Of a DNA stretch of 64,000 nt, positions 59 through 64,000 are shown one piece after another. Position 1 is the stretch's first letter. Each line of letters opens with the position of its first letter. Source of the DNA: Anthoceros angustus (taxonomy: Eukaryota; Plantae; Anthocerotophyta). Both the position numbers and the translations under genes were made by a program. The notes beneath the pieces were generated by a model. That model was given only the letters and a program-made list of their open reading frames with translations, searched no databases and had not been told where the DNA came from. The stretch covers positions 1,674,001 through 1,738,000 of the forward strand of contig MU008170.1 of NCBI GenBank assembly GCA_010909165.1. The letters run 5' to 3'.

Positions 59-2838
<2,780 letters not shown>

Positions 2839-42049: not shown

Positions 42050-45000
42050 ATGCATCACAATCTGGACTGTGGAACTGTTCCGTGCCATTCACAATCATAA
42101 AAACACCATCCAAATGTGACAAACAATGCAACAAACTACACCCACACAAATACCAGGAACCGGGCCAGAACTACTTGCCGAAGGAGAAGTGGCAAACCTG
42201 AATTGCAACCAGGAAATCATCTGCGACGCCAGGAGGGAAGAAGACATCTGGAAGCTTCTTGGTTTTTCCAGCACACATCCATCACAAGATGCAGGTTTGC
42301 TTCAAAGAATCATCCAAACGGAAGTAACCAGCCAACAATCATCGACATCCTGCCATCAGCTCAATACACTCAATCTGGACATCCTACCTGGTACTGCACC
42401 AAACTCAAATACTATGCAACTTCGAAGTCAGCTGTCTAGCATTGGAAGACTCCAATTCCAATTCCCTTCTCGAAATAGTATTTTGCAATCTCTCTCTGCA
42501 GCAGCAGGCTTTCCCTTCTACAACGTCTTTCTCCCAACTAGAGTTTCTACCGTGTTCGCAGCTGGAATAGCTGCCTCCGCAGCAGCCCTGTCCGCCCGAC
42601 TCCCACAAGCATCTTTCAAAGGGGATAAGAGCCCTTGCAACCTAGTCGAACATTGTCCAACTCCGCTCTTGTCGTTTCAGTCTTGTACTCCTATCCATGC
42701 CTCATCAGAAAGACCATAAAAAAGCAAGACACTTCGCGATCTGAAAAACAAAACAGTGCCAAGGCAGTCACAGCTGTATACCTCGACGAAGATGCTACCG
42801 AATTGTATGCATCATCGTGTGCTACAGTCCTTTTAGGATTGAAAGAACCTTTTCAGTCGCTCCGTCCTTCAAGAGGACACCCCTCTCCTTCAGAAGCGTG
42901 ATCTGCTCCTCATACAACTCCTCCTCTGATCGCAATACCGCGAAAAGCACATTTTCTAGGGTGATGTTGGAACAGATGGCAAATTCCTCCTTCATTCGCT
43001 GAAGCTTCTCAAGGTTCAATTCTTGCCAAACCTTTGCAGCCTTTGTACCTTGCAGGTGGGAATCCATATGGTTCACCAAAAGCATCTGCTTCGCAGCCGG
43101 GCACACTTTCTTCTTATCAATCGTTTGGCCAAGCTCATGGTCCTTTGCACGTCTCCTTGAACATCATGCCTGAAGCAAAAATCGGCACCGTTCAAACCGC
43201 CAGCCAAAAATCCTCGTCATGCGTTATTATTGATGGTCATCCACAATCGCAGTGACTTGTGTGACTGGAAAGTGGCAGTCACACCTGTAGACTTGCATAC
43301 TTGCCGTATGTTCAGTTAGAGTGACCTTCTCGATTGTCTGTGCCAATTCACCTCCGCCACACTTGCTCAACATGGATTGCACAAGAGTGGACTTGCCCAT
43401 TCTCCTCCCCAACCACAAGAATTACTTTATAGAACTTGCGAGTTTCTCATCGCCACAAATGTCATGTATCACGGCTCGGTCCACAAACCGTAGGCGAGAC
43501 TCTTGCTTCATCCCGTCTTTACTGCGAGGTTTGATGGAATCCGTGTTCCGGGAGCTTGAGGTACGATTTCCGTTAATGCTTCAAAACATCCGAGTGGTCC
43601 GCTTATAATCGTCCTCTCCGACTCAAATCGGCATCACTACTCTCTCATTCAGCACCAACCAGACTTGAGAAAGTCTTCATCATACTTTCCCGTTTACCTC
43701 GTCCTCTAGTATAATTTGTTTCGGTTCCATCGGCCTTTGTACCTTGCGGTGGGACGCTACTAAAGTCCGGGATTGCTACCATTCCTCCACTAATCCCTTT
43801 ATCGCCACTAGTGCATGCAATTAAGTTGAAAGCTGACACTAGCTACTCATTGCACTGCGACTCTTGCGGGTCTCGGTTTACGATCAAACACGGATGCTTG
43901 AATCGACCGATTTTCATCAATCCCTCCATCATTATGTTCAAATATGTCTTCTCTATTTCTACGAAGGAGCATGTCGCCGGTGATAACGCCGGAGAGTCGA
44001 GACCTCATCCGCCTGCAAATGTCATGTATCACGGCTCGGTCCACAAACCGTAGGCGAGACTCTTGCTTCATCCCGTCTTTACTGCGAGGTTTGATGGAAT
44101 CCGTGTTCCGGAGCTTGAGGTACGATTTCCGTTAATGCTTTCAAAACATCCGAGTGGTCCGCTTATAATCGTCCTCTCCGACTCAAATCGGCATCACTAC
44201 TCTCTCATTCAGCACCAACCAGACTTGAGAAAGTCTTCATCATACTTTCCCGTTTACCTCGTCCTCTAGTATAATTTGTTTCGGTTCCATCGATTGCACC
44301 ATGAGCGGTGGGACGCTACTAAAGTCGGGATTGCTACCATTCCTCCACTAATCCCTTTATCGCCACTAGTGCATGCAATTAAGTTGAAAGCTGACACTAG
44401 CTACTCATTGCACTGCGACTCTTGCGGGTCTCGGTTTACGATCAAACACGGATGCTTGAATCGACCGATTTTCATCAATCCCTCCATCATTATGTTCAAA
44501 TATGTCTTCTCTATTTCTACGAAGGAGCATGTCGCCGGTGATAACGCCGGAGAGTCGAGACCTCATCCGCCTGCAAATGTCATGTATCACGGCTCGGTCC
44601 ACAAACCGTAGGCGAGACTCTTGCTTCATCCCGTCTTTGCGAGGTTTGATGGAATCCGTGTTCCGGGAGCTTGGAGGTACGATTTGTTGCTTTCAAAACA
44701 TCCGAGTGGTCCGCTTATAATCGTCCTCTCCGGAAATGCCGCGCTACTCATCTTCTCATTCAGCACCAACCAAGCGGCTTGAGAAAGTCTTCATCATACT
44801 TTCCGTTTACCTCGTCCTCTAGTATAATTTGTTTCGGTTCCATCGCACTGCCATGAGGCGGCGACGATTACTAAAGCTAGGGATTGCTACCATTCCTCCC
44901 CATGCTAATCACGCTTTTCGCCACTAATTCCGCAATTAAGTTGAAAGCTACCACTAGCTAGCTACGAAATTGCACTGCGACTCTTGCGGGTCTCGGTTTA

Positions 45001-46736
45001 CGATCAAACAGATGCTTGAATCGACCGATTTTCATCAATCCCTCCATCATTATGTTCAAATATGTCTTCTATTTCTACGAAGGAGCATGTCGCCGGTGAT
45101 AACTCGCGGAGAGTCGAGACCTGCCGCAAGTCATCCACGATGAGGGTTGCGGTGATTGTCGACACCTCCGCCAAACTTCGTGCAGAATTTGAAAGGGTAT
45201 TTGTGTGCGTGAGGAAGGTTGTCTTTGCGGTGGGAGGTCTAAACTGTAGCAACAACCGGCTCCCATGGTCACTGATGCAGTTGAAGCACGGTGCTCGAGG
45301 CGGGTGCAAAGGCGGTAATACGCTTCACCCACAAGGCTATCCTCATAATCTTCACCCAATGGTTTGAAGGTGTTCGGCCTTTGTTATGCCAAGCATGTAA
45401 CGATCTCCAGTTGGATTGTCTTATGCGATAATCCTTTTCGTAGCGTCCATGCCTTCTATAATTTGAAAGGCATAAATCACATGTAGCTTTGGTCGCATCT
45501 GCGATCCTTTTCACCTCTGCGTACCATTTCACAGGAGCGTCCTTAACCCTCGCCTCTCGAAACAAGAGCTCAGATGTTCTCCCGTCACACGGACACAATA
45601 ATCTTCTTGATGCACCCGCAGTCGACAACCCAAGCATCTTAGGCGGTCCGAGTTCAACTAGAGGTGGATCAACATGACCGGGATCGGGGGCCAACTACGG
45701 TTGGTTGCCGCTGGACCACTTGAGGATTTTCACCAAGTAGCCGCCATTTTGTGAGACTTTATGTGCGCTCTGTGATTTCGCCTGCGGCTCCTCCCGGCTC
45801 CGGGCCGATGCTATGGTAGAAATTATCGGACTTCTCCACGCCCATGGGAACATACCATGCGTTACCGTTGTGTGAAGTCTGCATCAAGCTTCCTCCAAGC
45901 GTGCAACTAGTTTGGTGATGTAGCTTGCGGCCTTGAACAACATCTCTTGGCGAAATCCTCGCCCACCCAATCACAGGAGATCGGCGGCCCGTCCAGAGCA
46001 GTATTTCAAACTTTCCTTCACGTCACTGTAAAAGATCATCGAATTTCGGGGGCCTCACTTGATCGAGAATGGCCTTCTTCACTCACACCAGTCTTGTGGC
46101 ATTGCGAACCGATCAGGCGGTTGTTGAAGACTCTGGGAGCAGGTCCCCTGTGTCACAATGTTGAAGAGCCTTTCCTCGATGCCATTCTTTCTCGGTAGTC
46201 CCTTGCGGCTCCGTCGCCAATGTGGGGAGCCCCAAACCCGATTGCGATAGCCCGAACTTGTCTAGTATCCGGTGTCCGGAGAAAAGTGGCCACCGTGTAC
46301 TTGATAAGAACGGATCTTACGCGCCTCCCAAGCTGCGAACACCACTTTTGTGGGGCCAGTAGCGTGGGTGTTCGGACTCAAGAGGTCGTGGAGGAGCAAG
46401 CGGCAGCATCGGTAAGAGCCGAAGCCTCGATGGAAGAGGCCATCTACGGACCGTCCACGCACGAGCTCATTGTTGTTCGTCGCTCCGTCGCGCCCCACGG
46501 TGTCGATCGGGACGTCTGTGCGCTCTTGGTGCCCGGAAGCGGATGTAGAGTGTGCCATCCACATCACACACCATCTTCGTACCCTCCTCGGCCGCCGTGG
46601 TGTGGGCGAACTCAGTGGTCCTGGGACCGGCACCTCACTTTGAAGTTGAGCTTGGTCATGGAAGTGAGCGGTGAGAAAGGCTCGCTCTCGACCCCAGCCA
46701 GTGGAAGCTTCACGCATTGCCCTCGGCCGTCGCCAT
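42050..46736 (-). CDS. Class-3 lipase + P-loop GTPase fusion gene, copy 1; frame-disrupted in this sequence, with an internal ~559-bp triplication; true stop uncertain
   Basis: Across frameshifts: FHRGF, KVVF..S LGG, AIAIGFGAPHIGD (46213-46239), YVPMG, SHKM, VILVVG...GKSTLVQSML (43385-43430) and MLLVNHMD. No introns were recognised. Confidence 0.75.
43461..45100. repeat. ~559-bp segment in 3 tandem copies inside lipase-GTPase copy 1
   Basis: gtcatgtatcacggctcggtccacaaaccgtag occurs at 43461, 44021 and 44579. Unit 2 has a single copy at 57501. Confidence 0.95.
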
Positions 46737-46959
46737 GGGCCAACAATGTCCTTCACTCTGTCACCTCAAGCTGTTAGGAAAGAGGTGAGACTTTATAAAG
46801 AGATGAGACTTTCTGAGGAGGCAGGAACACTCCCATACACTACGAGTAGGGCTTGATGTAGTCCTAGCCTTGAACCCCATCGATCAACACGCAAAACCAC
46901 TTGCACACACCGCATCCCACGAATTGGTGGGCTTGGCCTTATATAGTCCTAGCCTTGGA

Positions 46960-47650: not shown

Positions 47651-48950
47651 TCCAAATCGAAGGAGATCTTATGTGAAATGAAGAAAAACAAATGGCAGTT
47701 GCTTTGAGCGCGCTCGCGTATGAACCGTGATTGTGGACGGGGTCCATCGATGGTGGTATGTACGTCCTTGGTAGGACCCTCTGCCTTCCGGGACCCTCTT
47801 CCTATCTTCTGCTTCATGTTGATGACAAGGGCTAATTTCTCTAAAGAATGCCTCTGTTTTGGAGGAGATTGAAGACCCTCCTTCCTCCTTGGCTTGGTTG
47901 CAGGAGAGTGTCGTGATTGGTGCTCTCGTTTTCCAGGGTTTGTGTGTGGATCCCACGCTCATGTGCTCGGAAAGCCGTGCCAGTCACTCGGACCCGCTCC
48001 TTGTGTACGAAATACATCCACGACTGGCATCTTCAGAGAATCGTTCAAACGGCACGTGAATTCAGTTGCAACGAGTTTAGATTGGAAGCAAACTCTAAAC
48101 TGATGAAAGAAATACATAGGGGCTTAACCGTGGGCTCCGAAATTGTTGATTTAAGGATGCTGTGAGGGCCTTGTTATCGAAGCTGAGCAATGGACAATTC
48201 TACTCCACTTGAGGCCAAATACATTCAGACCCCAAAGAAAGGCAAAACGCAGACAACCACAATCATGTTCACACTGTCGTCATATCAGAGCATCCGGGAC
48301 AAGTGTAAGAAGTGATCCGGAAGAAGTGACCAGTTCCAGACAGAACCTATGGGAGTCTGGGAACGTCAGAATGTGACCTGAAATAGCTCGTCTTCCAAAT
48401 GGCATGGAATGCTGTCAAGAACGTTCTTCTCTGCAGTTTAAAATTCCCTGCTGCGACGTAGTTGTGGAAATTTGTGGAAACTCACGCCTTCGAGAACCTG
48501 GATGTGACAAGTTAGTTGGCGAGCATCCTGGAAAGATTGAAATAGAGAAGGAAATTACTTATGGACGAAGGGAAGTTCATGTGCAAATGAAGCAGTGAGC
48601 GCAAAACGAGACCCACCTGGATGAGTGCGGGAACAGGGGCAGCAGTTTCAGGCCCCTGCAGGACATTCATTTCACATCCAGTTCATGCACCCTTTCCAGT
48701 CCTCTGCTGACATCAACCGCTTGGTCCCTGGAAACCATCTCTGCATGGAAAGGGAAAATGTGACTGTCAACTCTTCTCGTGTCGTTCTTCGTAAATCAAG
48801 TAGCCATGCACCATCATCGCCATACTGGTCCTTCACGTGCCTTGTTGAGCTTTAGAGAGGGCAAGTGCTACAGGTGTACAGTTGTATCCTCGCGCTCGAC
48901 ATCTAGGATCGATGAATGCCTTGTATCAGATGGAATACGAAGATTTCTTT

Positions 48951-50354
48951 CCTTGAATATCGCGTCGTATTTTACGAGGGAGTGAAGGTTGTGTTCTCAA
49001 CCGCACCTTTGTAACATGCTATGGTCTCAACGTTGTCTGTAGCATGCCAAAGATTACTTAATGCTGGTAGGGCCACATCAAGGGAAAACGATATCCCCAG
49101 GTATGCAAAGCATTGACTAAAGAAGCTCTTACCTCAGACGGGAAACTTTTAGCAAAAGACACAGAAACCATTCCGTGCTGATCAGCGAGGTGTCAAAGCC
49201 AATATGATCAAAATGGGCTGCCAGCCTGTGAAAGCCACCAAGACTTCTGTGAGACACGAACTTGGAGGTGCTAACTCTAAGGTCGCGTACAAACATGTGG
49301 AGTTAGACGACGCACCGTGGACATTTTTTCACAAAAACTTCGTTGAAGACACGCTGCTGGACGTGACACCCTGTCAGGTTCTCCGGTAACAATCACTGAA
49401 CAGAACACTTTCCAGCAATGCGGCGAGCATCCAGAAGGCCTGTTCCTCGGTTTTCATCACAAGGAGCAACAGTGCTGCCACATAGTTCATTCCCTGAATA
49501 GAGTAAGCAGGCTCGGCGTTATATTCCATCCATTCCCCCAAAACCTTAACAGGACCTCGGATTCGCACGAGTTAAAGCTTTTGATACACAGGAAAGGCAC
49601 TACTACCTGGCAATAACCAATATCAGAATCTCGAAATGAGTAGGCAACGAGGACCCGACGCAATGTAGCCCTTCCTTCCTCGCTGTTCACCCAAGGATGA
49701 GATAGAAATGTCCTGGATAGATCCTACAGGACGTCACACCCGGTAAGATGTTGCCTTGCCTCAGGAGGCCTTCAAGTTAAGCAAGTTGGCAGATGGGGCC
49801 ACCACGTCTACAGACATCTCCTGCTTTGGAACGAGCTCAAATGGGAAACTTACCCGGTCAATCTGGTGTGTCGCAGGGGTTTGCCTATCAACCACAGCTT
49901 CAGTGAGGTCCTGGTAGTAACTATCGGGCACTGTGGATCGCTTCTTGGCAGCCCCAGACAAAGCCTGCCAAACTCGAGGTCTCAGAGACGGAGGGATGCC
50001 TTTCCAAATCAGCTTCTTCAGCTGGACAGACCTTGTTAGGTTGGATATGGAGAGATGACACAAGGTTGCCCTGCTCAGAATGAGCCGAAATTTCCGGCTG
50101 CAGATACCATCCTGCACCCTTGTTTGCCTCCATAGCCCACCACACCCGACCCTGCTCGGCAACCCTCTCCTTCACGAGATTGAAAACCACAGCATCTTCA
50201 GCTGACAGCTCGAGACAGAATCCATACATATCTACAACTTTAACGGTGATGTTCTTCCGTGTGTGAGTCAATCCTCTGCTCTCCACTCAGGTTTCCCAGG
50301 ATAACCTCGAACCAGGGCATCCTGAGAACCTCCCAAACGCTCAAAGCCGAACAT
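48951..50354 (-). pseudogene. 3'-truncated TBC RabGAP copy 2 (last two exons missing, penultimate retained exon disrupted by a micro-inversion)
   Basis: Same exons as 35650-37045 with substitutions and indels. Homology to copy 1 stops at ccttgaatatcgc. Confidence 0.88.
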
Positions 50355-51944
50355 ATTCGTGGCTGTTCCACGGGATGACGCTAGGGTTGCTGTAGGACTT
50401 CCCCAAATAAATTTAGCCGCTCTTGGCTCTTCCGAATCCTCCCACCAGCGGCTCGCGTGCACGTTTTGAGACTCGCATGTCGTCTGAAGAACCCCAACTG
50501 TCTGTCTGCGCTCAGTAGACCTCGGTTACACTCCTGCTCCGATTCTCATATGTTAGATAAATATTTCGGTTACACTCCTGGTCTGATTCGCTGCTAGTAT
50601 GATCCTCATGTGCTGGACATATTTCAGTCACATTGCACGCTTCATCCCGCACTCATGCAGCTTTCAAATGACCAAGCCTCGGCAGCAAAACCACCTGACA
50701 AACATACCACAAAATCCATCAAAGAGCCGTTCCCATCCACTATCCTCACCACTACAGCAATCCTGGAAAGGCAGAACTGGCAAATCACTTCACCAAGCCA
50801 GAATGCCAGCGATTCCCCTCCTGAACGGGACGAGAGGTTGCAAATGAGTCGAACCGCAAACGTACGGGTTGCCAAATTCCGACCACAGCTCGGAAGGCTG
50901 ATTTCCGGCACTCTTGCGCATCAATGATCAACAGACCTAAAGGCACTCGAAAACACTCTAACCACGAATCACAGCAAGCGCAATGTCTGCTACGCCGCAG
51001 AGCAAGCGCTCCCGTTCGGCATCACACAACCCCAGCAGAACACATGATGCGCCAGTTCAAATTCCGAACGAAGTAAGCCAGAAAGAAAACACGGAAACCG
51101 TACAATGCCATTCGAAAAACATGCAGCCACTCCAAAAACAGGACAGCAAGCTTGAGTCACAGCTACCGGCAAGCACAATCCACTTCAACAAAACTCACCA
51201 GGCACAGATCGGGCACAGCGCATCCGTCCTCAAGCACACGGTCACCCCCCCGCTCCTGGAAATCGCAGCTAGCCCTGACCGAGATCCGCTCCCACGGCTC
51301 CAACGGTCTCCGTCTTCACCAAACCGGCAGCAGCGCAGGAAACAGGAACAAGCAGCGCAGCGGGGGCAACAGAACCCGGCGTCTGAGAGCGGAAGCTGGC
51401 GGAAGGGCCGGGCATAACCGACAAACAAAGCAAAGCGCCACCGATCCACGGCCCAGCCAGCCACCTTGCGGGAGCGCGCATCAAGCCCGAGGCTCAAAAT
51501 CGCAGATTTTCCCCGCCCGCTGCACAAGCAAAAGCAGCAGGCGGCATTGCACCAACCAGCTGCGGGCGCGTGGGGTTTGCGACAGAGGAGGAGGCGGAGA
51601 AGCAACAGCAGAAGCAGCAGTCGTAGCAGATGTGAAGACATAGAGCATGTGGAGGCGCTAACAGAGATGTGGGGCATGTGGAGGCGCTAACAGAGATGTG
51701 GGGCGTTGCCTTCGCACAAGCTGTTACGGCCCGACGACCACGTGCCAGAATAACTTGGCACTTAGCCTTGCCAACTGGAACGAGGCTACCTGGAAGAAGA
51801 AGTCGCACGACCGTCGGCGCCGCGTTAGAGAATCCCACTGGGGAGTGTGTCACCGGCTGCCTCAGCCCACAGCGAAATAGAAAAAAAGGCCGCAAGTCTC
51901 CCGGTCGTGAGGGAAATGGCCCAGTGTACACAAGGGGAATGTGG

Positions 51945-52785: not shown

Positions 52786-53732
52786 GGTAGGTGGTAACAC
52801 CAGGAAAGGCTTATATAAGAAGCTCCATATACAGTGAATTTTCTATTTAGTCACGTAGGTAACACCAGGAAAGGCTTATATAAGAAGCTACATATACAGT
52901 GAATTTTCTATTTAGTCACGTAGTCGGTCCCCTAACATTTTGTGATTCTTACAATACATCATCACAATCAATGCAATTAAAAATATTTTTTTTTCTCTCA
53001 CGACTTAAAAAAAATAAAGATTAATAGGTTTTTAGTTACTCAACCAACCAGAGGCTGTCAAATGCTCATCACCCAAATCTCCTCCTACAAGACTTTTATT
53101 TTCAACAGTTTATCATTCAAGGTTACCGAACACCCCCAGTGCACTATCCGTAATAGGGAGCAAGTATATGTTTTTTCCACTACTCGCTGGTTAGAAGGGT
53201 GTGGCACAAAGTGGAAAAGTGGAGGGGACGCAGACGCAAGGTGTGGAGAAGTTGATGGCGGCCGGTCTGGGCTGGGCCCATGCCAAATGTCTTAAGATTC
53301 AAGCGATGCACAAGGTCTTTACTACTAGTTCAAGTTTTTGATCACGAGATAAAGGATAAGGGGTAAGTCAAGATGAGGACATATTTAGATTACAGAGGTT
53401 CACAAAAAGGGTTGAAAACGCTAGAAGGAACCCTTTAAAATGAAAAAAAAATAAAAAAATATGTAGAGAGAACAAAAAATGCCAAAACTCAAGGGCAAGT
53501 GCACGCACTTATATCCTAAAACTAAATTTTTTTGGGTTTGTTTCATTGTTTTTTGATTTTTTGTTCATTTTTTTGGGAATGAACCGTTTGGGAATGCACT
53601 AGGAAGCATGAACCGTATGGGTTCATGCCTCTAGGGTGTTCTTGACCCCAGGTGCTCACACAAGTGCGTATTCTTAAAGTCTACATTTTGCTGTAATCCC
53701 ATTGTAATGCACTATAGTGAACTTTCTATAAA

Positions 53733-55277
53733 CAGTCGGCCCCCCCTAATTGGAAACTCTATAAATGGGATTCCTCTGTAAATGGGACCTCCCATCCTAC
53801 TTTCTTTAGTTTACAATGTAATAAATTGGACTTTTCCCTAAATGGTAATTGGGACCTTTTGAAACATACATTCATGTTAGTTTCACCTCTCTAAATGGGA
53901 CTTCTAATTTTTTACTAAAAAAAAATAAAAAAGAAAGAAAAAAGAATCGATTATTTCAGAGCACAATAGACTTTTAGGTGTGATTGAAGACTCTTAAGCT
54001 AAGCTTTTTCCTTTATGATAGGTAGAGGGTTTTTGATGTTGCTTAGAGAGAGTGCTAGCTTTCAAACAACTATACCGTACCCAAAGGGGTGGTTCAACAG
54101 GGTAATGCCGAAATAATTATTTTTTGAAAACTATAAGGTTCAACATACATATTAATATTTTTTAAAATTTCAACATTTATAAAAAATAATCTTATAAAAT
54201 TTCAACATTTATTAAAATACATAGGTATCTATATACAACTAATAGATGTGTGTAGACCTCCCCTAAACAAGCCCTAATCTTCCGACTCCACTCCAGCTGA
54301 GGTTGTAGCCTCAACAAGAGAGCCAAGGACCTGGTTCCAAGATCACCGCCTTGCGCAGCCCATGTGCGCATCTGCGGGCTCGCGAGCCTCGCGAGCCTCA
54401 CGATTGCGGAAGAAAGCCGGCCGCAGCTCATGAGCCTCACGAGGGCCGTGACCGCAGCTCGCGAGCCTCACGATAGATTGCTCGCGAGCCTCACGAGGCC
54501 GCCAGATCTCGCAGCTCGCGAGCCTCACGAGGCCGCCATCCGCATCTTGGTTGGGCAGCTCGCGAGCCTCACGAGCCGCCGATCCGCAGCTCGCAGGTTG
54601 CCGCATCGCAGCTCGCGAGCCTCACGAGGCTGCGCATCTGCGGGCTCGCGAGCCTCACGAGGCCGCTGCATGAGCTCGCGAGCCTCACAGGCCGCAGACC
54701 GCAGCTCGCGAGCCTCACGAGGCCGCCGTGACTGTGCTCGCGAGCCTCACGAGGCTGCGCATCTGCGGGCTCATGAGCCTCACGAGGCCGGCCAGACCGC
54801 AGCTCGCAGGTGCTACATCCGCAGCTCATGAGCCTCGCGAGCCTCGCGAGGTTCTTTGCATCTGGGGCTCGCGAGCCTCGCGAGCCTCGCGAGGTCAGAG
54901 CTCACCCTTGGTCCAGCAAGGCGAGCAAGGCAGCTCACGGCCAAGCAAGACCGCGAGGCTGTGCAGCCTCACCGCGCATGAGGTTGCTCCTTTCTCTGTT
55001 TCGGCATTTTAGACTCTTAAATATTTACACATATCGATTTTAAGCATAATAGCTTTTAGATTTTCAACTTTATTAATTCTAATTAATTAACCCCAATCAC
55101 CCATAGAGAAGTGGTAAAAGTTATTTTTGGTTAAATCTATCAATCAAAATTTAAAAATTTCTTTTTTGGTTATTTTTAAGTTTTTAATATTTTTAAAATT
55201 TAAATATTAAAAACACCTCCCCTAATGGGACTTCTAAAGCCACTCCGAACCCCCCAATTAGGGGAGGGGGTGGATTG
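53733..55277. mobile_element. ~1.55-kb non-autonomous TIR-type insertion (MITE-like), absent from unit 1
   Basis: Empty sites gaactttttatatacatactcatg lie at ~40320 and ~41194. The filled site has left end CAGTCGGCCCCCCCTAATTGG and right end CCAATTAGGGGAGGGGGTGGATTG|TA (imperfect TIRs), plus subterminal taaatggga/taatggga motifs. No transposase ORF is present. Confidence 0.8.
54370..54900. repeat. GC-rich array of about 14 palindromic units GCTCGCGAGCCTCACGAGG with variable related linkers
   Basis: Units at ~54378, 54426, 54457, 54480, 54514, 54558, 54611, 54644, 54674, 54704, 54736, 54769, 54824 and 54867. Confidence 0.92.
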
Positions 55278-56121
55278 TACTCATGTTTGATCGAGGCTAG
55301 GCTAGGCGCTAGGCGCGAAGCACGGTCACATTCATTCGTAAGTGTACCCTAAACCCCCAAGGAGTAAGGAGGTCCAAATATCCGCACTTGTGCGCGCAAG
55401 GGGTCCATGCAAAGATGGCACTTGCTCAATGGAGGGGCCCAAGCCACGGGGACTAGCTCTCGTTACCTGGAAGCTATCTATCACTCCCAACCTTAGGATT
55501 CTTTACCCTGGAGCTATTTTTAAGCTATTTAAGATGTCAGTAATCTAGACTAAGGAAGGGTATGCTTGCCACTAGACCTGAAGATGCTGCGCCTGCCTCA
55601 CTCGAAGTCCTCTTGATAATTAATCCCTTTGCAGGTTGCCGAAGGAAAGCCACCACAGAACACGATTGCCGGAAGAAAGCCACCACCAAACGCAAGGTGA
55701 CAAAAAATACAATGTTTCCGTGTGCTTAATTCTTTATCATATATTAAATTATATATATTATGATTTATGTATACAAAGCGATTCAAGATCTCCTCCATAT
55801 GGGGGTGTGTGTGGAGACGGCAAACGGAATAAACTTAGCGTGTCTTCGGACTCGGTGAAGAGAAATCGAAACCCGTTTTGAGTGGATGTGATGCCCAATC
55901 ATATTTATCTTGTTCTTATTCTTCGCTTTAACAATTAATCATAACAAAAATACAAATAATATATCCTTGTTGAATTGAGCCAAGAAAGGCCACGCAAGGA
56001 GAGCATGCAGTTCCAGCCATGCAACTACTAAGATACATAATGCCCCGGAAAAACCAAATGAAAGTAGGGTTCCGCCAACTTCTGATTGCAATGTACAAGC
56101 GCGGTGGCCTATGCTACTTGC

Positions 56122-59100
56122 TCATGCATCACAATCTGCACTGTGGAACTGTTCCGAGCCATTCACATTCATAAACACACCATCCAAATGTGATAAACAA
56201 TGCAACAAACTACAGCCACACAAATACCAGGAACCGGGCCAGAACTTCTTGCCGAAGGAGAAGTGGCAAACCTGAATTGCAACCAGGAAATCATCTGCGA
56301 ATCCAGGAGGGAAGAAGACATCTGGAAGCTTCTTGGTTTTTCCAGCACACATCCATCACAAGATGCAGGTTTGCTTCAAAGAATCATCCAAGTAAGCAAA
56401 CGAATCATCGACATCCCCATCATTTCACACTCAATCGCACATCCTACCTGCACCGCACCACACTCACTCACTATGCAACCGACGTCACCGCCTAGCATCA
56501 AGACTCCATTCCAATCCCCTTCTCGAAATAGTATTTTGCAATCTCTCTCTGCAGCAGCAGGCTTTCCCTTCTACAACCTCTTTCTCCCAACTAGAGTTTC
56601 CGCTGGTGGAATAGCGCCTCCGCAGCAGCCTCCGACTCCCACAAGCATCTTTCAAAGGGGATAAGAGCCCTTGCAACCTAGTCGAACATTGTCCAACTCC
56701 GCTCTTGTCGTTTCAGTCTTGTACTCCTATCCATGCCTCATCAGATGGACCATAAAAAAGCAAGACACTTCGCGATCTGAAAAACAAAACAGTGCCAAGG
56801 CAGTCACAGCTGTATACCTCGACGAGGATGCTACCGAATTGTATGCATCATCGTGTGCTACAGTCCTTTCAGGATTGAAAGAACCTTTTCAGTGGCTCCG
56901 TCCTTCAAGAGGACACCCCTCTCCTTCAGCAGCGTGATCTGCTCCTCATACAACTCCTCCTCTGATCGCAATACCGTGAGAAGCACATTTTGTAGGGTGA
57001 TGTTGGAACAGATGGCAAATTCCTCCTTCATACGCTGAAGCTTCTCAAGGTCCAATTCTTTCCAAACCTTTGCAACCCTTGTACCTTGCAGGTGGGAATC
57101 CATATGGTTCACCAAAAGCATCTGCTTCGCAGCCGGGCACACTTTCTTCTTATCAATCGTTTGGCCAAGCTCATGGTCCTGTTTCTGCACGTCTCCCTTG
57201 AACATCGCCATGACGAAGCAAAAGCACCTGCTCCAAGCACGCCAGCCAAAAATCCTCGCCGCGATGTGGGTTGATGTGTCCACACAGCAGTGACTTGTGT
57301 GACCGCTGGAAAGTGGCAGGTCACACCTGTAGACTTGCATACTTGCCGTGTGTTCGATTAGAGTGAGCTTTCTCTGATTATGCATTCACCTCCGCCACAC
57401 TTGCTCAACATGCATTGCACAAGAGTGGTCTTGCCCACATTCTCCTCCCCAACCAGAAGAATTACTTTATAGAAAATGCGGAGTTTCTCATCTCGCAAAT
57501 GTCATGTATCACGGCTCGGTCCACAAACCGTAGCCGTGACTCTTGCTCTAGTCCGTCTTCTGCGGTTTGATGGAATCCGTGTTCCGGGAGCTTGGAGGTC
57601 GATTTGTTCATGCTTAGTTTCAAAACATCCGAGTGGTCCTTATAATCGTCCTCTCCATCAATCCATCGCTACTCATCTCGCTCATTCCGAGCACCAACCA
57701 GCCTTGAGAAAGTCTTCATCATACTTTCCCGTTTACTCGTCCTCTAGTATAATTTGTTTCGGTTCCATCGACGCACTATGACAAAGGCCGTACTAAAGCT
57801 GGATTGCTACCATTCCTCCTCGCTAATCGCTAGTACGCCACTACCGCTCGCAATTGTTGAAAGCTACACACTAGTGTCGAAATTGCACTGCGACTCTTGC
57901 GGGTCTCGGTTTACGATCAAACAGATGCTCAATCGACCGATTTTCATCAATCCCTCATCATTTGTGAAATATGTCTTCTCTATTTCTACGAAGGAGCATG
58001 TCGCCAGTGATAACTTCTGCCAGAGAGTCGAGACTCCCGCAAGTCATCCACGATGAGGTTGCTGATTGGTCGACACCTCGCCAAACTTCGCAAGGTGAAT
58101 TTGAAAGGTATTTGTGTGCGTGAGGAAAGGTTGTGCCGGTGGGAGGTCTAAACTGTAGCAACAACCGGCTCCATGGTCACTGCAGTTGAAGCACGTGTCG
58201 AGGCGAATTTGCAAAGGCGGAAATACGCTCACCCACAAGGCTATCCTCATAATCTTCACCCAATGGTTTGAAGGTGTTGTCGCTTTGTTATGCAAAAGCG
58301 ATCTCCAGTTGGATTGTCTTATCGTGAGACAATCCTTTTCGGCGTCCATGCCTTTTATGTCAGCTGAAAGGCATAAATCACATGTAGCTTTGGTCGCATC
58401 TGCGATCCTTTTCACCTCTGCGTACCATTTCACAGGAACGTCCTTAACCCTCGCCTCTCGAAACAAGAGCTCCAGATGTTCTCCCGTCACGGACACAATA
58501 ATCTTCTTCTGATCTGCACTGAGTCTGCGAGACACCCCAAGCATCTTAGGCAGAGGTCCGAGTTCAACTAGAGGTGGATCAACATGACCAGGATCAGGGC
58601 CAACTACGGTTGGTTGCCCGCTGGACCACTTGAGGATTTTCTCCAAGTAGACCGCCATTTTGTGAGACTTTATGTGCGCCTCTGTGATTTCGCCCTGCAG
58701 CTCCTCCCCGGCTTCGTCCAGCCGGCGCTAGGTAGAAATTATCGGACTTCTCCAGCCCCATGGGAACATACCATGCGTTACGTTGTGTGTGCTCACGCTT
58801 CACCTCCAAGCTGCAACTAGTGTGGTGATGTAGCCTGCGGCCTTGAACAACATCTCTTCGGGCGAAATCCCTCGCCCCACCCAATCACACAGGAGATAGG
58901 CGGCCACGTACAGGAACAGGTACTTTACATTTTCCTCCACGTCCTGTAAAAGATCATCGAATTTCTGGGGGGGCCTCACTTGATCGAAAATGGCCTTCAC
59001 CTGCTCCGCCACCAGTCTTGTGGCATTGCAAACCGATCGGGGCAGGTTGTTGAAGAGTCTGGGAACAGGGTCCTCTGGTGTCACAATGTTGAAGAGCCTA

Positions 59101-59684
59101 TCCTCGATGCCATTCTTTCTCGTAGTCTTGCCTCCGCCAATGTGGGAGCCCCAAACCCGATTGCGATAGCCCGAACTTGTCTAGTATCAAGTGTCCGGAG
59201 AAAAGTGGCCACCCTGTACTTGATAAGAACCGGATGCAACGCGCCTCCCAAGCTATGCCCATGAACACCACTTTTGTGGGGACGCCGTAACATGGGTGTT
59301 CGGACTGAAGAGGTCGTGGAGGAGGAGCACCGAAAGACGGCCACCCAAGAGCCGAAGCCTCGATGGAAGAGGCCATCTGGACCCGCCCACGCACGAGCTC
59401 ATTGTTGTTCGTCAGCTCGCACACCGGTGTCGATCAGACGTGCCGCTCTTGGTGCCGAGGATGTAGAGTGTGCCATCCGCCCCTCGGCACACACCATCTT
59501 CGACTCCACGCCCCTCGGCCGTGGTGTGGACGAACTCGAAAGGTGGTCCGAGCTGGGACCTTCGCACCTCCGCCTGAAGTTGAGCTTGGTCATCGAAGTA
59601 GACGATGCGGCTGAGAAAGGCAGCTCGCTCTACGCAGGCCACTGACGGCTGGAAGCTTCCTGCATTGCCCTCGACCGTCGCCAT
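56122..59684 (-). CDS. Class-3 lipase + P-loop GTPase fusion gene, copy 2; frame-disrupted in this sequence; true stop uncertain
   Basis: MATVEGN...DGTLYILGT, HGHSLGGAL (59243-59260), AIAIGFGAP, NIVTPEDPVPRLFNNLP (~59061-59085), WYVPMG, IKSHKMAVYLEKIL (58647-58664), FYKVILLVGEENVGKTTLVQCML (57426-57470), VDT and MLLVNHMD (57098-57109). Confidence 0.8.
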
Positions 59685-59904
59685 GGGCCAACAATGTCCT
59701 TCACTCTGTCAACTCAACTGTTAGGAAAAGAGGTGAGACTTTATAAAGAGATGAGACTTCTGAGAGGCAGAACACTCCCATACACTACGAGTAGGGCTTG
59801 ATGTAGTCCTAGCCTTGAACCCCATCGATCAACACGAAACCACTTGCACACACCGCATCCCACTAATTGGTGGGCTTGGCCTTATAGTCCTAGCCTTGGA
59901 TCCT

Positions 59905-60575
59905 CGGTCACTTGACCTTGAATCCTATTGGTTACTTGACCGAGTCCTATTGGTTACTTGACCTTGAGTCTAATAGCACTTTGACCTTGAGTCCTATTGG
60001 TCACTTGACCTTGAATCCTCCTAGTAACTTCACTTGCCCTTTACTTTTGGACTTTCTAGAAGATACGTTTTTGGACTTTCTAAAAGATTCTCTGTAGAAG
60101 ATTCGTGACTTTCAAGTTTGTTATTTTTAGTGACTGTGGACGGGGTTGTTAATTTTAGTGACTGTGGACCCCGGGTCCGTCGACTTGGACTTTCTACAAG
60201 ATACTTTGTTGGACTTTTAAAAGGTACTTTGTAGAAGATGTGACTTTCAAGTTTGTTATTTTTAGTGATTGTGGACGGGGTCCATCGACTTTTTGGACTT
60301 TCTAGAAGATACTTTTTGGACCTTCTAAAAGATTCTTTGTAGAAGATGCGTGACTTTCAAGTTTGTTATTTTTAGTGATTGTGGACGAGGTCCATTGACT
60401 TTTTGGACTTTCTAGAACATACTTTTTGGACCTTCTAAAAGATTCTTTGTAGAAGATGCGTGACTTTCAAGTTTGTTATTTTTAGAGCACTTTGACTTTC
60501 AAGTTTGTTATTTTAGGGCACTCTTCATAACCTGTTTTAGAGCACTCTTCACAACCTATTTTTAGGGCACTCTTC
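59905..60575. repeat. Unit-2 copy of the compound 24-bp / ~105-bp minisatellite
   Basis: Same units as 46960-47650. Confidence 0.9.
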
Positions 60576-61885
60576 AAATGCTACAATCCAAATCGAAGGA
60601 GATCTTATGTGAAATGAAGAAAACAAATGGCAGTTGCTTTGAGCGCGCTCGCGTATGAACCGTGATTGTGGACGGGGTCCATCGATGGTGGTATGTACGT
60701 CCTTGGTAGGACCCTCTGCCTTCCGGGACCCTCTTCCTATCTTCTGCTTCATGTTGATGACAAGGGCTAATTTCTCTAAAGAATGCCTCTGTTTTGGAGG
60801 AGATTGAAGACCCTCCTTCCTCCTTGGCTTGGTTGCAGGAGAGTGTCGTGATTGGTGCTCTCGTTTTCCAGGGTTTTGTGTGTGGATCCCACGCTCATGT
60901 GCTCGGAAAGCCGTGCCAGTCACTCGGACCCGCTCCTTGTGTACGAAATACATCCACGACTGGCATCTTCAGAGAATCGTTCAAACGGCACGTGAATTCA
61001 GTTGCAACGAGTTTAGATTGGAAGCAAACTCTAAACTGATGAAAGAAATACATAGGGGCTTAACCGTGGGCTGGAAATTGTTGATTTAAGGATGCTGTGA
61101 GGGCCTTGTTATCGAAGCTGAGCAATGGACAATTCTACTCCACTTGAGGCCAAATACATTCAGACCCCAAAGAAAGGCAAAAACGCAGACAACCACAATC
61201 ATGTTCACACTGTCGTCATATCAGAGCATCCGGGACAAGTGTAAGAAGTGATCCGGAAGAAGTGACCAGTTCCAGACAGAACCTATGGGAGTCTGGGAAC
61301 GTCAGAATGTGACCTGAAATAGCTCGTCTTCCAAATGGCATGGAATGCTGTCAAGAACGTTCTTCTCTGCAGTTTAAAATTCCCTGCTGCGACGTAGTTG
61401 TGGAAATTTGTGGAAACTCACGCCTTCGAGAACCTGGATGTGACAAGTTAGTTGGCGAGCATCCTGGAAAGATTGAAATAGAGAAGGAAATTACTTATGG
61501 ACGAAGGGAAGTTCATGTGCAAATGAAGCAGTGAGCGCAAAACGAGACCCACCTGGATGAGTGCGGGAACAGGGGCAGCAGTTTCAGGCCCCTGCAGGAC
61601 ATTCATTTCACATCCAGTTCATGCACCCTTTCCAGTCCTCTGCTGACATCAACCGCTTGGTCCCTGGAAACCATCTCTGCATGGAAAGGGAAAATGTGAC
61701 TGTCAACTCTTCTCGTGTCGTTCTTCGTAAATCAAGTAGCCATGCACCATCATCGCCATACTGGTCCTTCACGTGCCTTGTTGAGCTTTAGAGAGGCAAG
61801 TGCTACAGGTGTACAGTTGTATCCTCGCGCTCGACATCTAGGATCGATGAATGCCTTGTATCAGATGGAATACGAAGATTTCTTT

Positions 61886-63293
61886 CCTTGAATATCGCGT
61901 CGTATTTTACGAGGGAGTGAAGGTTGTGTTCTCAACCGCACCTTTGTAACATGCTATGGTCTCAACGTTGTCTGTAGCATGCCAAAGATTAAGTATACTT
62001 AATGCTGGTAGGGCCACATCAAGGGAAAACGATATCCCCCAGGTATGCAAAGCATTGACTAAAGAAGCTCTTACCTCAGACGGGAAACTTTTAGCAAAAA
62101 GACACAGAAACCATTCCGTGCTGATCAGCGAGGTGTCAAAGCCAATATGATCAAAATGGGCTGCCAGCCTGTGAAAGCCACCAAGACTTCTGTGAGACAC
62201 GAACTTGAGGTGCTAACTCTGCGGTCGCGTACAAACATGTGGAGTTAGACGACGCACCGTGGACATTTTTTCACAAAACTTCGTTGAAGACACGCTGCTG
62301 GACGTGACACCCTGTCAGGTTCTCCGAGTAACAATCACTGAACAGAACACTTTCCAGCAATGCGGCGAGCATCCAGAAGGCCTGTTCCTCGGTTTTCATC
62401 ACAAGGAGCAACAGTGCTGCCACATAGTTCATTCCCTGAATAGAGTAAGCAGGCTCGGCGTTATAATCCATCCATTCCCCAAAACCTTAACAGGGCCTCG
62501 GATTCGCACAAGTTAAAGCTTTTGATACACAGGAAAGGCACTCCTACCTGGCAATAACCAATATCAGAATCTCGAAATGAGTAGGCAACGAGGACCCGAC
62601 GCAATGTAGCCCTTCCTTCCTCGCTGTTCACCCAAGGATGAGATGGAAATGTCCTGGATAGATCCTACAGGACGTCACACGCGGTAACATGTTGCCTTGC
62701 CTCAGGAGGCCTTCAAGTTAAGCAAGTTGGCAGATGGGGCCACCACGTCTACAGACATCTCCTGCTTTGGAACGAGCTCAAATGGGAAACTTACCGGTCA
62801 ATCTGGTGTGTCGCAGGGTTTGCCTATCAACCACAGCTTCAGTGAGGTCCTGGTAGTAACTATCGGGCACTGTGGATCGCTTCTTGGCAGCCCCAGACAA
62901 AGCCTGCCAAACTCGAGGTCTCAGAGACGGAGGGATGCCTTTCCAAATCAGCTTCTTCAGCTGGACAGACCTTGTTAGGTTGGATATGGAGAGATGACAC
63001 AAGGTTGCCCTGCTCAGAATGAGCTGAAATTTCCGGCTGCAGATACCATCCTGCACCCTTGTTTGCCTCCATAGCCCACCACACCCGACCCTGCTCGGCA
63101 ACCTCTCCTTCACGAGATTGAAAACCACAGCATCTTCAGCTGACAGCTCGAGACAGAATCCATACATATCTACAACTTTAACGGTGATGTTCTTCCGTGT
63201 GTGAGTCAATCCTCTGCTCTCCACTCAGGTTTCCCCAGGATAACCTCGAACCAGGGCATCCTGAGAACCTCCCAAACGCTCAAAGCCGAACAT
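61886..63293 (-). pseudogene. 3'-truncated TBC RabGAP copy 3 (start of unit 3, which runs off the window end)
   Basis: Nearly identical to copy 2, including the junction and micro-inversion. Confidence 0.88.
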
Positions 63294-64000
63294 ATTCGTG
63301 GCTGTTCCACGGGATGACGCTAGGGTTGCTGTAGGACTTCCCAAATAAATTTAGCCGCTCTTGGCTCTTCCGAATCCTCCCACCAGCGGCTCGCGTGCAC
63401 GTTTTGAGACTCGCATGTCGTCTGAAGAACCCCAACTGTCTGTCTGCGCTCAGTAGACCTCGGTTACACTCCTGCTCCGATTCTCATATGTTAGATAAAT
63501 ATTTCGGTTACACTCCTGGTCTGATTCGCTGCTAGTATGATCCTCATGTGCTGGACATATTTCAGTCACATTGCACGCTTCATCCCGCACTCATGCAGCT
63601 TTCAAATGACCAAGCCTCGGCAGCAAAACCACCTGACAAACATACCACAAAATCCATCAAAGAGCCGTTCCCATCCACTATCCTCACCACTACAGCAATC
63701 CTGGAAAGGCAGAACTGGCAAATCACTTCACCAAGCCAGAATGCCAGCGATTCCCTCCTGAACGGGACGAGAGGTTGCAAATGAGTCGAACCGCAAACGT
63801 ACGGGTTGCCAAATTCCGACCACAGCTCGGAAGGCTGATTTCCGGCACTCTTGCGCATCAACGATCAGCAGACCCTAAAGTCAGCAGGCACTCGAAAACA
63901 CTCTAACCACGAATCACAGCAAGCGCAATGTCTGCTACGCCGCAGAGCAAGCGCTCCCGTTCGGCATCACAAAACCCCAGCAGAACACATGATGCGCCAG

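What the first reader, a model, noticed from the sequence alone, without database searches (positions are those of the whole stretch)
56122..59684. Hidden, apparently intronless class-3-lipase + GTPase fusion gene, tandemly amplified
Seen in sequence: stitching minus-strand frames gives a lipase_3 fold with a full Ser-Asp-His triad in the right order (HRGF, GHSLGG, GFGAP.IGD, DPVPRL, YVP.G, SHKMAVY). After an unassigned middle region comes a TRAFAC-type GTPase: G1 GEENVGKT, a G3-like VDT and a G4-like NHMD. A helical and partly hydrophobic tail follows. A second copy lies at 42050-46736. The ORF track shows only small unrelated-looking pieces. Established knowledge: plant lipase_3 folds include the EDS1/PAD4 immune family. 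From memory, an uncharacterised Arabidopsis lipase_3 protein with a C-terminal P-loop (At3g07400-like) has the same motif order. Inference: this is a divergent, intron-free, copy-number-variable member that may act as a GTP-regulated membrane lipase, in the manner of immunity-related GTPases. Its lack of introns among intron-dense neighbours points to retroposition or horizontal acquisition.
Basis: partly seen in the sequence, partly recalled or inferred. Interest (0 to 1): 0.82.

Follow-up and report, generated by a model that had tools for sequence, protein, structure and literature searches.

The report
Broken lipase plus P-loop fusion gene pair
A bryophyte-like plant genome holds two side-by-side copies of a gene with no known relatives that joins a fat-cutting enzyme to a nucleotide-binding part, but both copies as assembled are broken by dozens of small gaps that look more like sequencing noise than real decay.

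Summary
One uninterrupted piece passes Pfam's own threshold for class-3 lipase (24.3 bits against 22).

No intact gene is present as assembled. Copy 2 (59684-56858) needs at least 18-21 frame changes to be read through. Copy 1 (about 46760-42822) needs more, and it also carries a 1.1-kb internal tandem duplication.

If either copy's letter may be used at each difference, one stop-free 945-codon reading runs from the ATG at 59684 to a TAG at 56858. All lipase and P-loop motifs lie in one frame of that reading. The opposite strand needs at least 5 stops and 200 shuffles need 3-14. So lipase and P-loop most likely belong to one intron-free reading frame.

The claimed tail (56857-56122) is not part of that frame.

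The differences between copies look like errors: clustered patches, about two small indels per three mismatches, no codon-position bias. The adjoining duplicated flank is about 99% identical. No sequencing reads were available to settle this.

Only the Walker A loop of the "GTPase" has any statistical support, and the G3 glycine is missing. Retroposition or horizontal transfer is not supported. No relatives were found for the linker or the nucleotide-binding half.

The scan noted this same stretch before (s1-253390) and the same family on other DNA of this genome (s1-324622).

The parts
56858..59684 (-). Copy 2: inferred single reading frame (ATG 59684-59682 to TAG 56860-56858). It gives about 945 codons once at least 18 small indels and 1 base are taken from copy 1. 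It is broken as assembled.
58647..59684 (-). Class-3 lipase region, from the N-terminus to the His motif. It is read across at least 6 frame breaks.
   Evidence: Pfam Lipase_3 at 24.3 bits on 59398-59084 and 21.8 bits on ORF 59344-59081; motif order
59243..59260 (-). GHSLGG nucleophile elbow (candidate catalytic Ser).
   Evidence: inside the Pfam match
59055..59072 (-). DPVPRL (candidate catalytic Asp). Disrupted in copy 1.
58647..58667 (-). SHKMAVY (candidate catalytic His), about 135 residues after the Asp.
57503..58646 (-). Linker of about 380 codons with no detectable relatives. Its first two thirds are open for 227 codons (58727-58047). The stretch 58047-57465 is the most broken part, and it holds a moderately hydrophobic segment.
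   Evidence: phmmer against 1.84 billion representatives gave 0 hits
57427..57450 (-). Walker A / G1 loop GEENVGKT, preceded by the beta-strand-like KVILLV.
   Evidence: Pfam MMR_HSR1 and Roc E about 0.008; NCBIfam small_GTP E 0.0066; PDB small GTPase EhRabX3 E 6e-4, Midasin, Der
57002..57109 (-). NHMD (G4-like, 57109-57098) and ICSN (G5-like, 57013-57002), in a block that has no indels between the copies.
   Evidence: no family or PDB match for this block
56858..56860 (-). TAG stop shared by both copies (copy 1: 42824-42822). Inferred end of the reading frame.
56125..56857 (-). The claimed 'tail'. It is not a continuous ORF in either copy, since its stops are shared in indel-free blocks. It is either 3' UTR or unresolved small exons. 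It holds a weak DUF1232-like motif at 56328-56290.
   Evidence: DUF1232 at 15.4 bits against a cutoff of 23
59740..59745 (-). TATAAA element 61 nt upstream of the ATG.
   Evidence: read from the sequence; function inferred
42822..46760 (-). Copy 1 of the same gene. It is more broken: at least 39 frame switches, GHSLGG and DPVPRL disrupted.
43456..45125 (.). Tandem triplication inside copy 1, with units of 552-560 bp. Units 1 and 2 are 98.6% alike. Unit 3 is about 90% like them. The corresponding stretch occurs once in copy 2 (57496-58040).
60600..64000 (.). Clean duplicated flank (partner 47665-51055): 14 mismatches and 21 indels, of which 16 are one-base homopolymer length changes.

Best explanation
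This locus holds two tandem copies of a lineage-restricted nuclear gene. Its single, intron-free reading frame of about 945 codons encodes an N-terminal class-3 (Ser-Asp-His) lipase, a linker of about 380 residues with no known relatives, and a C-terminal P-loop NTPase domain of about 200 residues. The motif order and spacing of that last domain fit a Ras-like small GTPase. Most of the dozens of small frame-breaking indels that hide the gene are private to one copy and have the character of local consensus or assembly noise, so the real gene, at least copy 2, may be intact.

Inferred mechanism (not shown): the nucleotide-binding domain acts as a switch that controls where or when the lipase cuts acyl-ester lipids.

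Shown: the lipase family match, the motif positions, the two copies, the pattern of differences, and the threaded single frame. Inferred: intactness in the organism, the GTPase class, and any function.
For: - Lipase_3 is above Pfam's gathering score on one uninterrupted piece.
- Nine motifs lie in the right order.
- Choosing either copy's allele at each difference gives a stop-free reading from ATG 59684 to TAG 56858 with all nine motifs in one frame. The opposite strand needs at least 5 stops and 200 shuffles need 3-14, with none at 1 or below.
- The junction from linker into P-loop is bridged by one private 1-nt indel in each copy.
- Noise signature in the gene region: 213 mismatches and 143 indel events in 3.56 kb. 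Only 25 of the 143 indels are multiples of three. The ts:tv ratio is 85:128. Only 33 of 181 mismatches are isolated; the rest sit in dirty patches. Mismatches fall on codon positions 24:19:21.
- The adjoining duplicated flank has 14 mismatches in 3.4 kb, and its differences are mainly one-base homopolymer changes, the mark of long-read consensus error.
- Where the copies have no indels (56631-57180, 56125-56390), the coding frame up to the shared TAG at 56858 is open in both.
- P-loop spacing in the threaded frame is G1 749, VDD/VDT 805, NHMD 863, ICSN 895, end 945. This is close to my recollection of Ras: 10-17, 57, 116, 145, 189 (comparison from general knowledge).
- GTPases lead the weak Walker A matches in Pfam, NCBIfam and PDB.
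Against: - No reads could be laid, because no run was listed, so noise is inferred and not shown.
- As assembled, copy 2 is barely more open than random genome windows (21 against a mean of 26 switches).
- Simple rules do not open the frame. Always taking the longer allele needs 25 switches and always the shorter needs 26. The errors, if errors, go both ways, and only 5 of the 18 needed corrections in copy 2 are in homopolymers.
- With about 130 free choices the threading test is permissive, though the controls never reach its result.
- Units 1 and 2 of the copy 1 triplication are 98.6% alike, which does not look like independent per-read noise.
- A clean block still shows 2.7% substitutions between copies against 0.4% in the flank.
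- No GTPase family reaches threshold, the back half has no match at all, and AlphaFold2 gave pLDDT 43.
- No relatives exist in the searched collections and there is no expression evidence.
Confidence: 0.55

Rival explanations
1. Both copies are real, decaying pseudogenes of a once-functional lipase-P-loop gene. The indels and the copy 1 internal triplication exist in the organism's DNA.
For: At least 21 and at least 39 frame switches are needed. Differences show no codon-position bias, and only 25 of 143 indels are multiples of three, so there is no sign of selection. Copy 1 has a frame-breaking 1.1-kb tandem duplication with two near-identical units. Most frame-breaking indels are not in homopolymers. 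No relatives or transcripts were found.
Against: The same duplication unit has a flank with only 0.4% substitutions, while the gene half shows about 6% mismatches plus 4% indel events. Neutral decay should not be 7-15 times faster in one half. An indel-to-substitution ratio near 0.7 and a ts:tv ratio below 1 are unlike natural divergence as I know it from general knowledge. The lesions are private to one copy, and a full frame can be threaded. Long open stretches of 227 and 175 codons survive.
Confidence: 0.3
2. The nucleotide-binding part is not a small GTPase. It is an ATPase of the AAA+/STAND kind, which would make this a hydrolase-NTPase protein akin to liverwort HNL or fungal lipase-NACHT immune receptors.
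For: The Walker A piece matches ATPase families about as well as GTPases: AAA_15, AAA_22, nSTAND3 and NACHT in Pfam, several ATPases in PADLOC, and Midasin in PDB. 'VTAIVDD' reads as a Walker B motif. G3 lacks its glycine. Bryophytes are known to fuse alpha/beta-hydrolase domains to NBS-LRR (PMC3352924).
Against: No piece gives an NB-ARC or NACHT match near threshold. The frame ends about 195 residues after the P-loop, with no room for an NB-ARC/ARC2 module or for repeats. HNL genes have three conserved introns, and none is needed here. The spacing G1-G3-G4-G5-end fits a Ras-like domain.
Confidence: 0.15
3. Lipase and P-loop are two separate neighbouring genes, or the P-loop resemblance is chance, and the 'fusion' is an artefact of stitching frames.
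For: The stretch 58047-57465 between them is the least open part of copy 2. The P-loop evidence is only at motif level. There is no RNA evidence.
Against: A stop-free path crosses the whole interval and the junction when alleles of the two copies are combined, and no control reaches this. Translated similarity between the copies continues through the interval. An earlier scan note reports the same lipase / hydrophobic segment / P-loop order in further copies on another piece of this genome (s1-324622, not checked here).
Confidence: 0.08
4. The gene arrived by retroposition or horizontal transfer, as the first reader proposed from its lack of introns.
For: No intron is needed over about 2.8 kb. 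No plant relatives were detected.
Against: An intronless 898-codon UGP3-like plant gene lies 8 kb away. No poly(A) remnant follows the stop. A TATAAA element lies upstream. GC content matches the window. Protein collections, metagenome contigs and viral contigs held no relatives that could serve as a donor.
Confidence: 0.05

Closest known systems
Class-3 lipases (Pfam PF01764 Lipase_3), such as fungal triacylglycerol lipases and plant DAD1-type phospholipases A1
   Same: The profile match is above threshold. HRGF, the GHSLGG nucleophile elbow, GFGAP, D-x-VP and a later His motif lie in canonical order.
   Different: The sequence is very divergent: phmmer finds no solved lipase even at E 10. 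About 135 residues separate the Asp and His motifs. The domain is followed by about 600 further residues that include a P-loop domain.
EDS1 / PAD4 / SAG101 plant immune lipase-like proteins
   Same: An N-terminal class-3 lipase-like domain joined to a large C-terminal non-lipase region. From general knowledge, EDS1 also has a long spacing between its Asp and His.
   Different: The pieces downstream of the lipase gave no Pfam match. The C-terminal partner here is a P-loop NTPase. Kinship with this family was not established.
Small GTPase domains used as switches inside larger proteins (Roc of ROCO proteins, Miro, immunity-related GTPases)
   Same: A hydrophobic strand followed by GxxxxGKT, a later hhhhD, then NHMD about 58 residues on, then a C-S-N about 32 residues on, and about 50 residues to the end. 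This spacing resembles Ras.
   Different: No family profile reaches threshold. The G3 DxxG glycine is absent. G4 is N-H-x-D rather than N-K-x-D. No COR domain is detected. A fusion to a lipase was not found in the papers searched.
Liverwort HNL class (alpha/beta-hydrolase-NBS-LRR; PMC3352924) and fungal lipase-NACHT NLR-like proteins
   Same: A bryophyte gene family joining an N-terminal hydrolase to a P-loop NTPase, and present in several copies.
   Different: There is no NB-ARC or NACHT match and no LRR. The protein ends about 195 residues after the P-loop. The conserved HNL introns are absent.

Membership tests
Class-3 lipase (Pfam Lipase_3, PF01764) | Profile match at or above Pfam's gathering score | tested here: met
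   24.3 bits against a cutoff of 22, E 3.2e-5, profile 31-117 of 140, on the uninterrupted piece 59398-59084. 21.8 bits on ORF 59344-59081.
Class-3 lipase (Pfam Lipase_3, PF01764) | GxSxG nucleophile elbow | tested here: met
   GHSLGG at 59260-59243 in copy 2. It is broken in copy 1, which reads GVRSLGGA.
Class-3 lipase (Pfam Lipase_3, PF01764) | Catalytic Asp and His after the Ser, in that order | tested here: inconclusive
   DPVPRL (59072-59055) and SHKMAVY (58667-58647) lie in the right order but in another frame of the assembly. They are assigned by motif only, not by alignment or structure.
Class-3 lipase (Pfam Lipase_3, PF01764) | Uninterrupted coding sequence | tested here: not met
   At least 6 frame changes lie within the lipase region of copy 2 as assembled, and more in copy 1.
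Ras-like / TRAFAC small GTPase | G1 Walker A GxxxxGK[ST] after a hydrophobic strand | tested here: met
   KVILLVGEENVGKT at 57450-57427.
Ras-like / TRAFAC small GTPase | Match to a GTPase family profile above its threshold | tested here: not met
   Best scores are MMR_HSR1 16.9 bits against 21.9, Roc 16.6 against 27, and TIGR00231 16.2 against 42.5. All cover the P-loop only. The in-frame back half 57232-56861 matches no GTPase in Pfam, NCBIfam, PADLOC, PDB or the Atlas.
Ras-like / TRAFAC small GTPase | G3 DxxG | tested here: not met
   Copy 1 reads VDDHQ. Copy 2 reads VWTHQ in the shared frame, or VDTSTH in another frame. Neither has a glycine. Sequence noise could be responsible.
Ras-like / TRAFAC small GTPase | G4 [NT]KxD at Ras-like spacing, and G5 | tested here: inconclusive
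   NHMD lies 58 residues after the G3 position and ICSN 32 residues later. Both are identical in the two copies within an indel-free block. This is a motif and spacing match only.
Ras-like / TRAFAC small GTPase | GTPase fold | tested here: inconclusive
   AlphaFold2 on the 124-residue in-frame half gave mean pLDDT 43, which is unusable. The whole domain has no unbroken reference in the window.
EDS1/PAD4/SAG101 | C-terminal EP domain after the lipase-like domain | tested here: not met
   The pieces downstream of the lipase gave no Pfam match.
HNL-type NLR (hydrolase-NBS-LRR) | NB-ARC domain, C-terminal LRR, three conserved introns (PMC3352924) | tested here: not met
   The weak-match lists hold no NB-ARC hit. 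The frame ends about 195 residues after the P-loop at a TAG shared by both copies. No intron is needed.
The five papers naming it were not opened, and their titles concern microRNA, small-RNA and seed-oil association studies.
DUF1232 (PF06803) membrane motif in the tail | Profile match above threshold, in frame with the gene | tested here: not met
   15.4 bits against a cutoff of 23. The piece lies beyond the shared stop and further stops.

The most novel reading that the evidence does not exclude
The organism has an intact, expressed, lineage-specific family of proteins of about 945 residues. In these a catalytically competent class-3 lipase is fused, in one intron-free frame, to a Ras-like nucleotide switch with an unusual G3. 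That would be a nucleotide-gated lipase effector, possibly used in defence or membrane remodelling. It would have no detectable relatives among about 15 billion public proteins, and it would be invisible to annotation only because the assembly is locally noisy.
Probability: 0.25. Interest if true: 0.65.

Novelty: new variant of a known kind. Interest (0 to 1): 0.4.

Why it matters
If the gene is intact in the organism, it would be a domain combination that I found described nowhere: a class-3 lipase governed by a fused P-loop switch. It occurs in an early-diverging land-plant lineage whose genome, according to other notes of this scan, also holds unusual death- and immunity-type fusions.

It also has practical weight. 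Parts of this assembly carry dense small-indel noise, most clearly in duplicated segments. 'Dead' or 'hidden' genes reported from such stretches need checking against reads before any biological reading is made.

If the copies are true pseudogenes, the finding is a minor relic.

Tried and rejected
- **Reads:** The look-up of sequencing runs listed no run, so read laying could not be used.
- **Relatives:**
  - phmmer of the 227-residue open piece against 1.84 billion representatives gave 0 hits.
  - The word search with the 175-residue piece gave none.
  - Two metagenome-contig scans and two viral-contig scans gave none.
  - Atlas look-ups gave no usable lead.
  - Exact-product look-ups of the 204-residue ORF and of UGP3 were not on record.
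- **Synteny route through UGP3:** the nearest relative is 71% identical, on a 4.7-kb unnamed contig. Mosses and liverworts are at 59-60%. No related genome locus could be fetched.
- **PDB sequence searches** of the lipase and NTPase pieces found only P-loop-level matches.
- **PADLOC and NCBIfam** gave only P-loop-level matches.
- **AlphaFold2** on the in-frame back half of the NTPase region gave pLDDT 43 and was discarded.
- **The idea that errors are deletions only** was rejected. Always taking the longer or always the shorter allele does not open the frame.
- **Transposon borders:** no inverted repeats around the unit. The other ORFs of the duplicated unit and two plus-strand ORFs over the tail have no Pfam match.
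- **Tail as part of the ORF, or spliced on:** I looked for introns in the tail. A good acceptor-like site (ttttgtttttcag, near 56779) exists, but every frame stops again within about 20 codons, and no convincing acceptor precedes the DUF1232-like piece. This is left unresolved.
- **HNL/NLR reading:** rejected on domain content and length.
Full report
**What is there.** The minus strand between 59684 and 56122 has no long ORF, only pieces in all three frames.
- HRGF 59365-59354
- GHSLGG 59260-59243
- GFGAP 59158-59144
- DPVPRL 59072-59055
- YVPMG 58770-58756
- SHKMAVY 58667-58647
- GEENVGKT 57450-57427
- NHMD 57109-57098

The longest open pieces are 58727-58047 (227 codons), 57385-56861 (175), 59180-58803 (126) and 59398-59084 (105). 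The last of these, although about 20 of its residues are out of frame, scores 24.3 bits against Pfam Lipase_3 (gathering score 22, E 3.2e-5, profile positions 31-117 of 140). The lipase assignment therefore holds by Pfam's own criterion. It is a divergent member, since phmmer finds no solved lipase even at E 10.

**The second copy and the duplication.** A second copy lies at about 46760-42822. The two copies sit in a tandem segmental duplication, 39.7-51.06 kb against 53.08-64.0 kb, with a period of 13-14 kb that runs to the window's end. There is no third copy in the window. Copy 1 also holds a tandem triplication of a 552-560-bp unit (43456-45125) that occurs once in copy 2. Units 1 and 2 are 98.6% alike and unit 3 is about 90% like them.

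**How broken it is.** To pass from 59684 to 56125 without reading a stop, copy 2 needs at least 21 frame switches and copy 1 at least 39. Random windows of the same genome need 26 on average and shuffles need 38. Read alone, neither copy is a gene.

**The pattern of differences between the copies.**
- With affine gap costs, the 3.56-kb gene region shows 213 mismatches and 143 indel events. Sizes are 1 nt x64, 2 nt x39 and 3 nt x21. Only 25 are multiples of three and only 39 are in homopolymers. The ts:tv ratio is 85:128.
- In the 2.8-kb reading frame (59684-56859), only 33 of 181 mismatches are isolated (ts 15, tv 18). The rest lie in dirty patches together with indels.
- Clean mismatches fall on codon positions 24:19:21.
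- By contrast, the adjoining 3.4 kb of the same duplication unit (60600-64000 against 47665-51055) has 14 mismatches and 21 indels, and 16 of those indels are one-base homopolymer length changes. That is the usual residue of long-read consensus error.
- An 898-codon UGP3-like ORF at 34349-31653 is intact, so unique sequence in this window is well polished.
- From general knowledge, an indel-to-substitution ratio near 0.7, a transversion-rich spectrum, clustering in patches and a 15-fold contrast in substitutions with the neighbouring half of the same repeat unit are unlike natural divergence. They fit locally poor consensus.
- Earlier notes on this genome report assembly frameshifts elsewhere (s1-253383, s1-324572, s1-267829). 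I treat these as leads only.
- I could not test the point directly, because no sequencing run was listed.
- Facts that do not fit pure noise: simple 'longer allele' or 'shorter allele' rules do not open the frame; only 5 of the 18 needed corrections in copy 2 are in homopolymers; two units of the copy 1 triplication are nearly identical; and an indel-free block still differs by 2.7%.

**Is it one reading frame?** I aligned the copies and allowed either copy's allele at each of 132 indel and 181 mismatch sites. I then asked for the smallest number of stops on a continuous reading.
- From the ATG at 59684 to the TAG at 56860-56858 the answer is 0 on the coding strand.
- The opposite strand needs 5.
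- 200 shuffles of the constant columns need 3-14, mean 7.75.
- A zero-stop path also exists that keeps HRGF, GHSLGG, GFGAP, DPVPRL, YVPMG, SHKMAVY, GEENVGKT, NHMD and ICSN in one frame. It is 945 codons long and borrows 18 indel alleles and one base from copy 1.
- With copy 1 as the backbone, at least 21 indel and 5 base alleles are needed, and two units of its triplication have to be set aside.
- The passage from linker to P-loop is bridged by one private one-base indel in each copy.

The test is permissive, and the path is not proven to be the true protein. It does show that the lesions are overwhelmingly private to one copy, and that lipase, linker and P-loop share one frame with no need for an intron. 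This threaded model has no reference in the window.

**The end of the gene.** The TAG at 56860-56858 and the stops that follow (near 56831, 56804, 56741, 56738, 56678, 56420 and 56356) are shared by both copies. Most, including the TAG itself, lie inside blocks that have no indel between the copies. The frame therefore ends at 56858, as the scan's other note on this stretch (s1-253390) also has it. The 'helical and partly hydrophobic tail' down to 56122 is either 3' UTR or unresolved exons. Its DUF1232-like motif (56328-56290) scores 15.4 bits against a cutoff of 23.

**The nucleotide-binding part.**
- The piece with KVILLVGEENVGKTTL gives only Walker A-level matches. In Pfam these are MMR_HSR1 and Roc at E about 0.008, alongside AAA, STAND and ABC families. 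In NCBIfam it is small_GTP at E 0.0066. PADLOC returns several ATPases. In PDB it matches a Rab-like GTPase at E 6e-4, then Midasin, Der and G-alpha.
- The in-frame back half (57232-56861) is 90% identical between the copies, with no gaps beyond its first 18 residues. It matches no family, no solved chain and no Atlas cluster. AlphaFold2 gave pLDDT 43 on it.
- In favour of a Ras-like domain is the spacing in the threaded frame: G1 at 749, a hydrophobic strand ending in D at 805, NHMD at 863, ICSN at 895, and the end at 945.
- Against it, G3 has no glycine. Copy 1 reads VDDHQ and copy 2 reads VWTHQ.
- I therefore call it a P-loop NTPase, probably Ras-like (about 0.6), with an AAA+/STAND ATPase as the alternative.
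- It is not an HNL-type NLR (PMC3352924). There is no NB-ARC match and no LRR, only about 195 residues follow the P-loop, and the conserved HNL introns are absent.

**Origin.** Nothing supports retroposition or transfer.
- A TATAAA element lies 61 nt upstream of the ATG.
- No poly(A) trace follows the stop.
- GC content matches the window.
- The nearby UGP3-like gene is also intron-free.
- No possible donor was found in protein, metagenome or viral collections.
- By UGP3 the genome is a bryophyte-grade land plant whose own proteome is not in the collection. The best match is 71% identical, and mosses and liverworts are at 59-60%. The absence of relatives is therefore weaker evidence for novelty than it looks.

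**Verdict.**
- The lipase is real.
- A single intron-free frame joining it to a P-loop domain is supported.
- The GTPase class, the membrane tail, the origin story and any function are not.

Whether the organism has an intact gene depends on reads that I could not obtain. I put about 0.55 on 'real gene, mostly masked by local assembly noise' and about 0.3 on 'true pseudogenes'. The domain combination was not found in the papers searched and has no detectable relatives. I rate it a new variant of known kinds (class-3 lipases and switch-NTPase fusions), of moderate interest until accurate sequence and RNA show it is alive.

Noticed in passing
window 31653-34349 (-): An uninterrupted 898-codon ORF for a UGP3-like UDP-glucose pyrophosphorylase (Pfam Hexapep_UGP3_C, 6.8e-56). 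It has no intron here. The best public relative is 71% identical, and mosses and liverworts are at 59-60%.
   Followed up: partly
window 60600-64000 vs 47665-51055: The two nearly identical duplicated flanks differ mostly by one-base homopolymer length changes (16 of 21 indels, against 14 mismatches). This flags residual long-read consensus error in duplicated parts of the assembly.
   Followed up: yes
window 43456-45125: A tandem triplication of a 552-560-bp unit inside copy 1 of the gene. Two units are 98.6% alike and the third about 90%. It is either a real recent duplication or an assembly stutter.
   Followed up: partly
window 46953-47640 and 59906-60576: Arrays of 24-nt, 110-nt and 32-nt tandem repeats lie just upstream of each gene copy, at the boundary between the noisy and the clean halves of the duplication unit.
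   Followed up: no
window 2184-2720 (+) and 3341-3943 (+): Two ORFs match flavin amine oxidase. The first covers the C-terminal part of the profile (323-442) and the second the N-terminal part (1-61). They look like parts of two neighbouring genes or exons out of order.
   Followed up: no
window 56290-56328 (-) and 42216-42254 (-): The motif LPDVFFPPG(F/V)ADDFLVA resembles the DUF1232 core (15.4 bits, below the cutoff). It sits in a 77-codon open piece that is 93.5% identical between the copies, downstream of the gene's shared stop.
   Followed up: partly
window 40254-41244 and 53652-53769: An 873-bp tandem repeat lies downstream of copy 1 (98% between units). It appears only once, at about 75%, downstream of copy 2. 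About 1.5 kb (53734-55278) in copy 2's unit has no partner in copy 1's unit.
   Followed up: no
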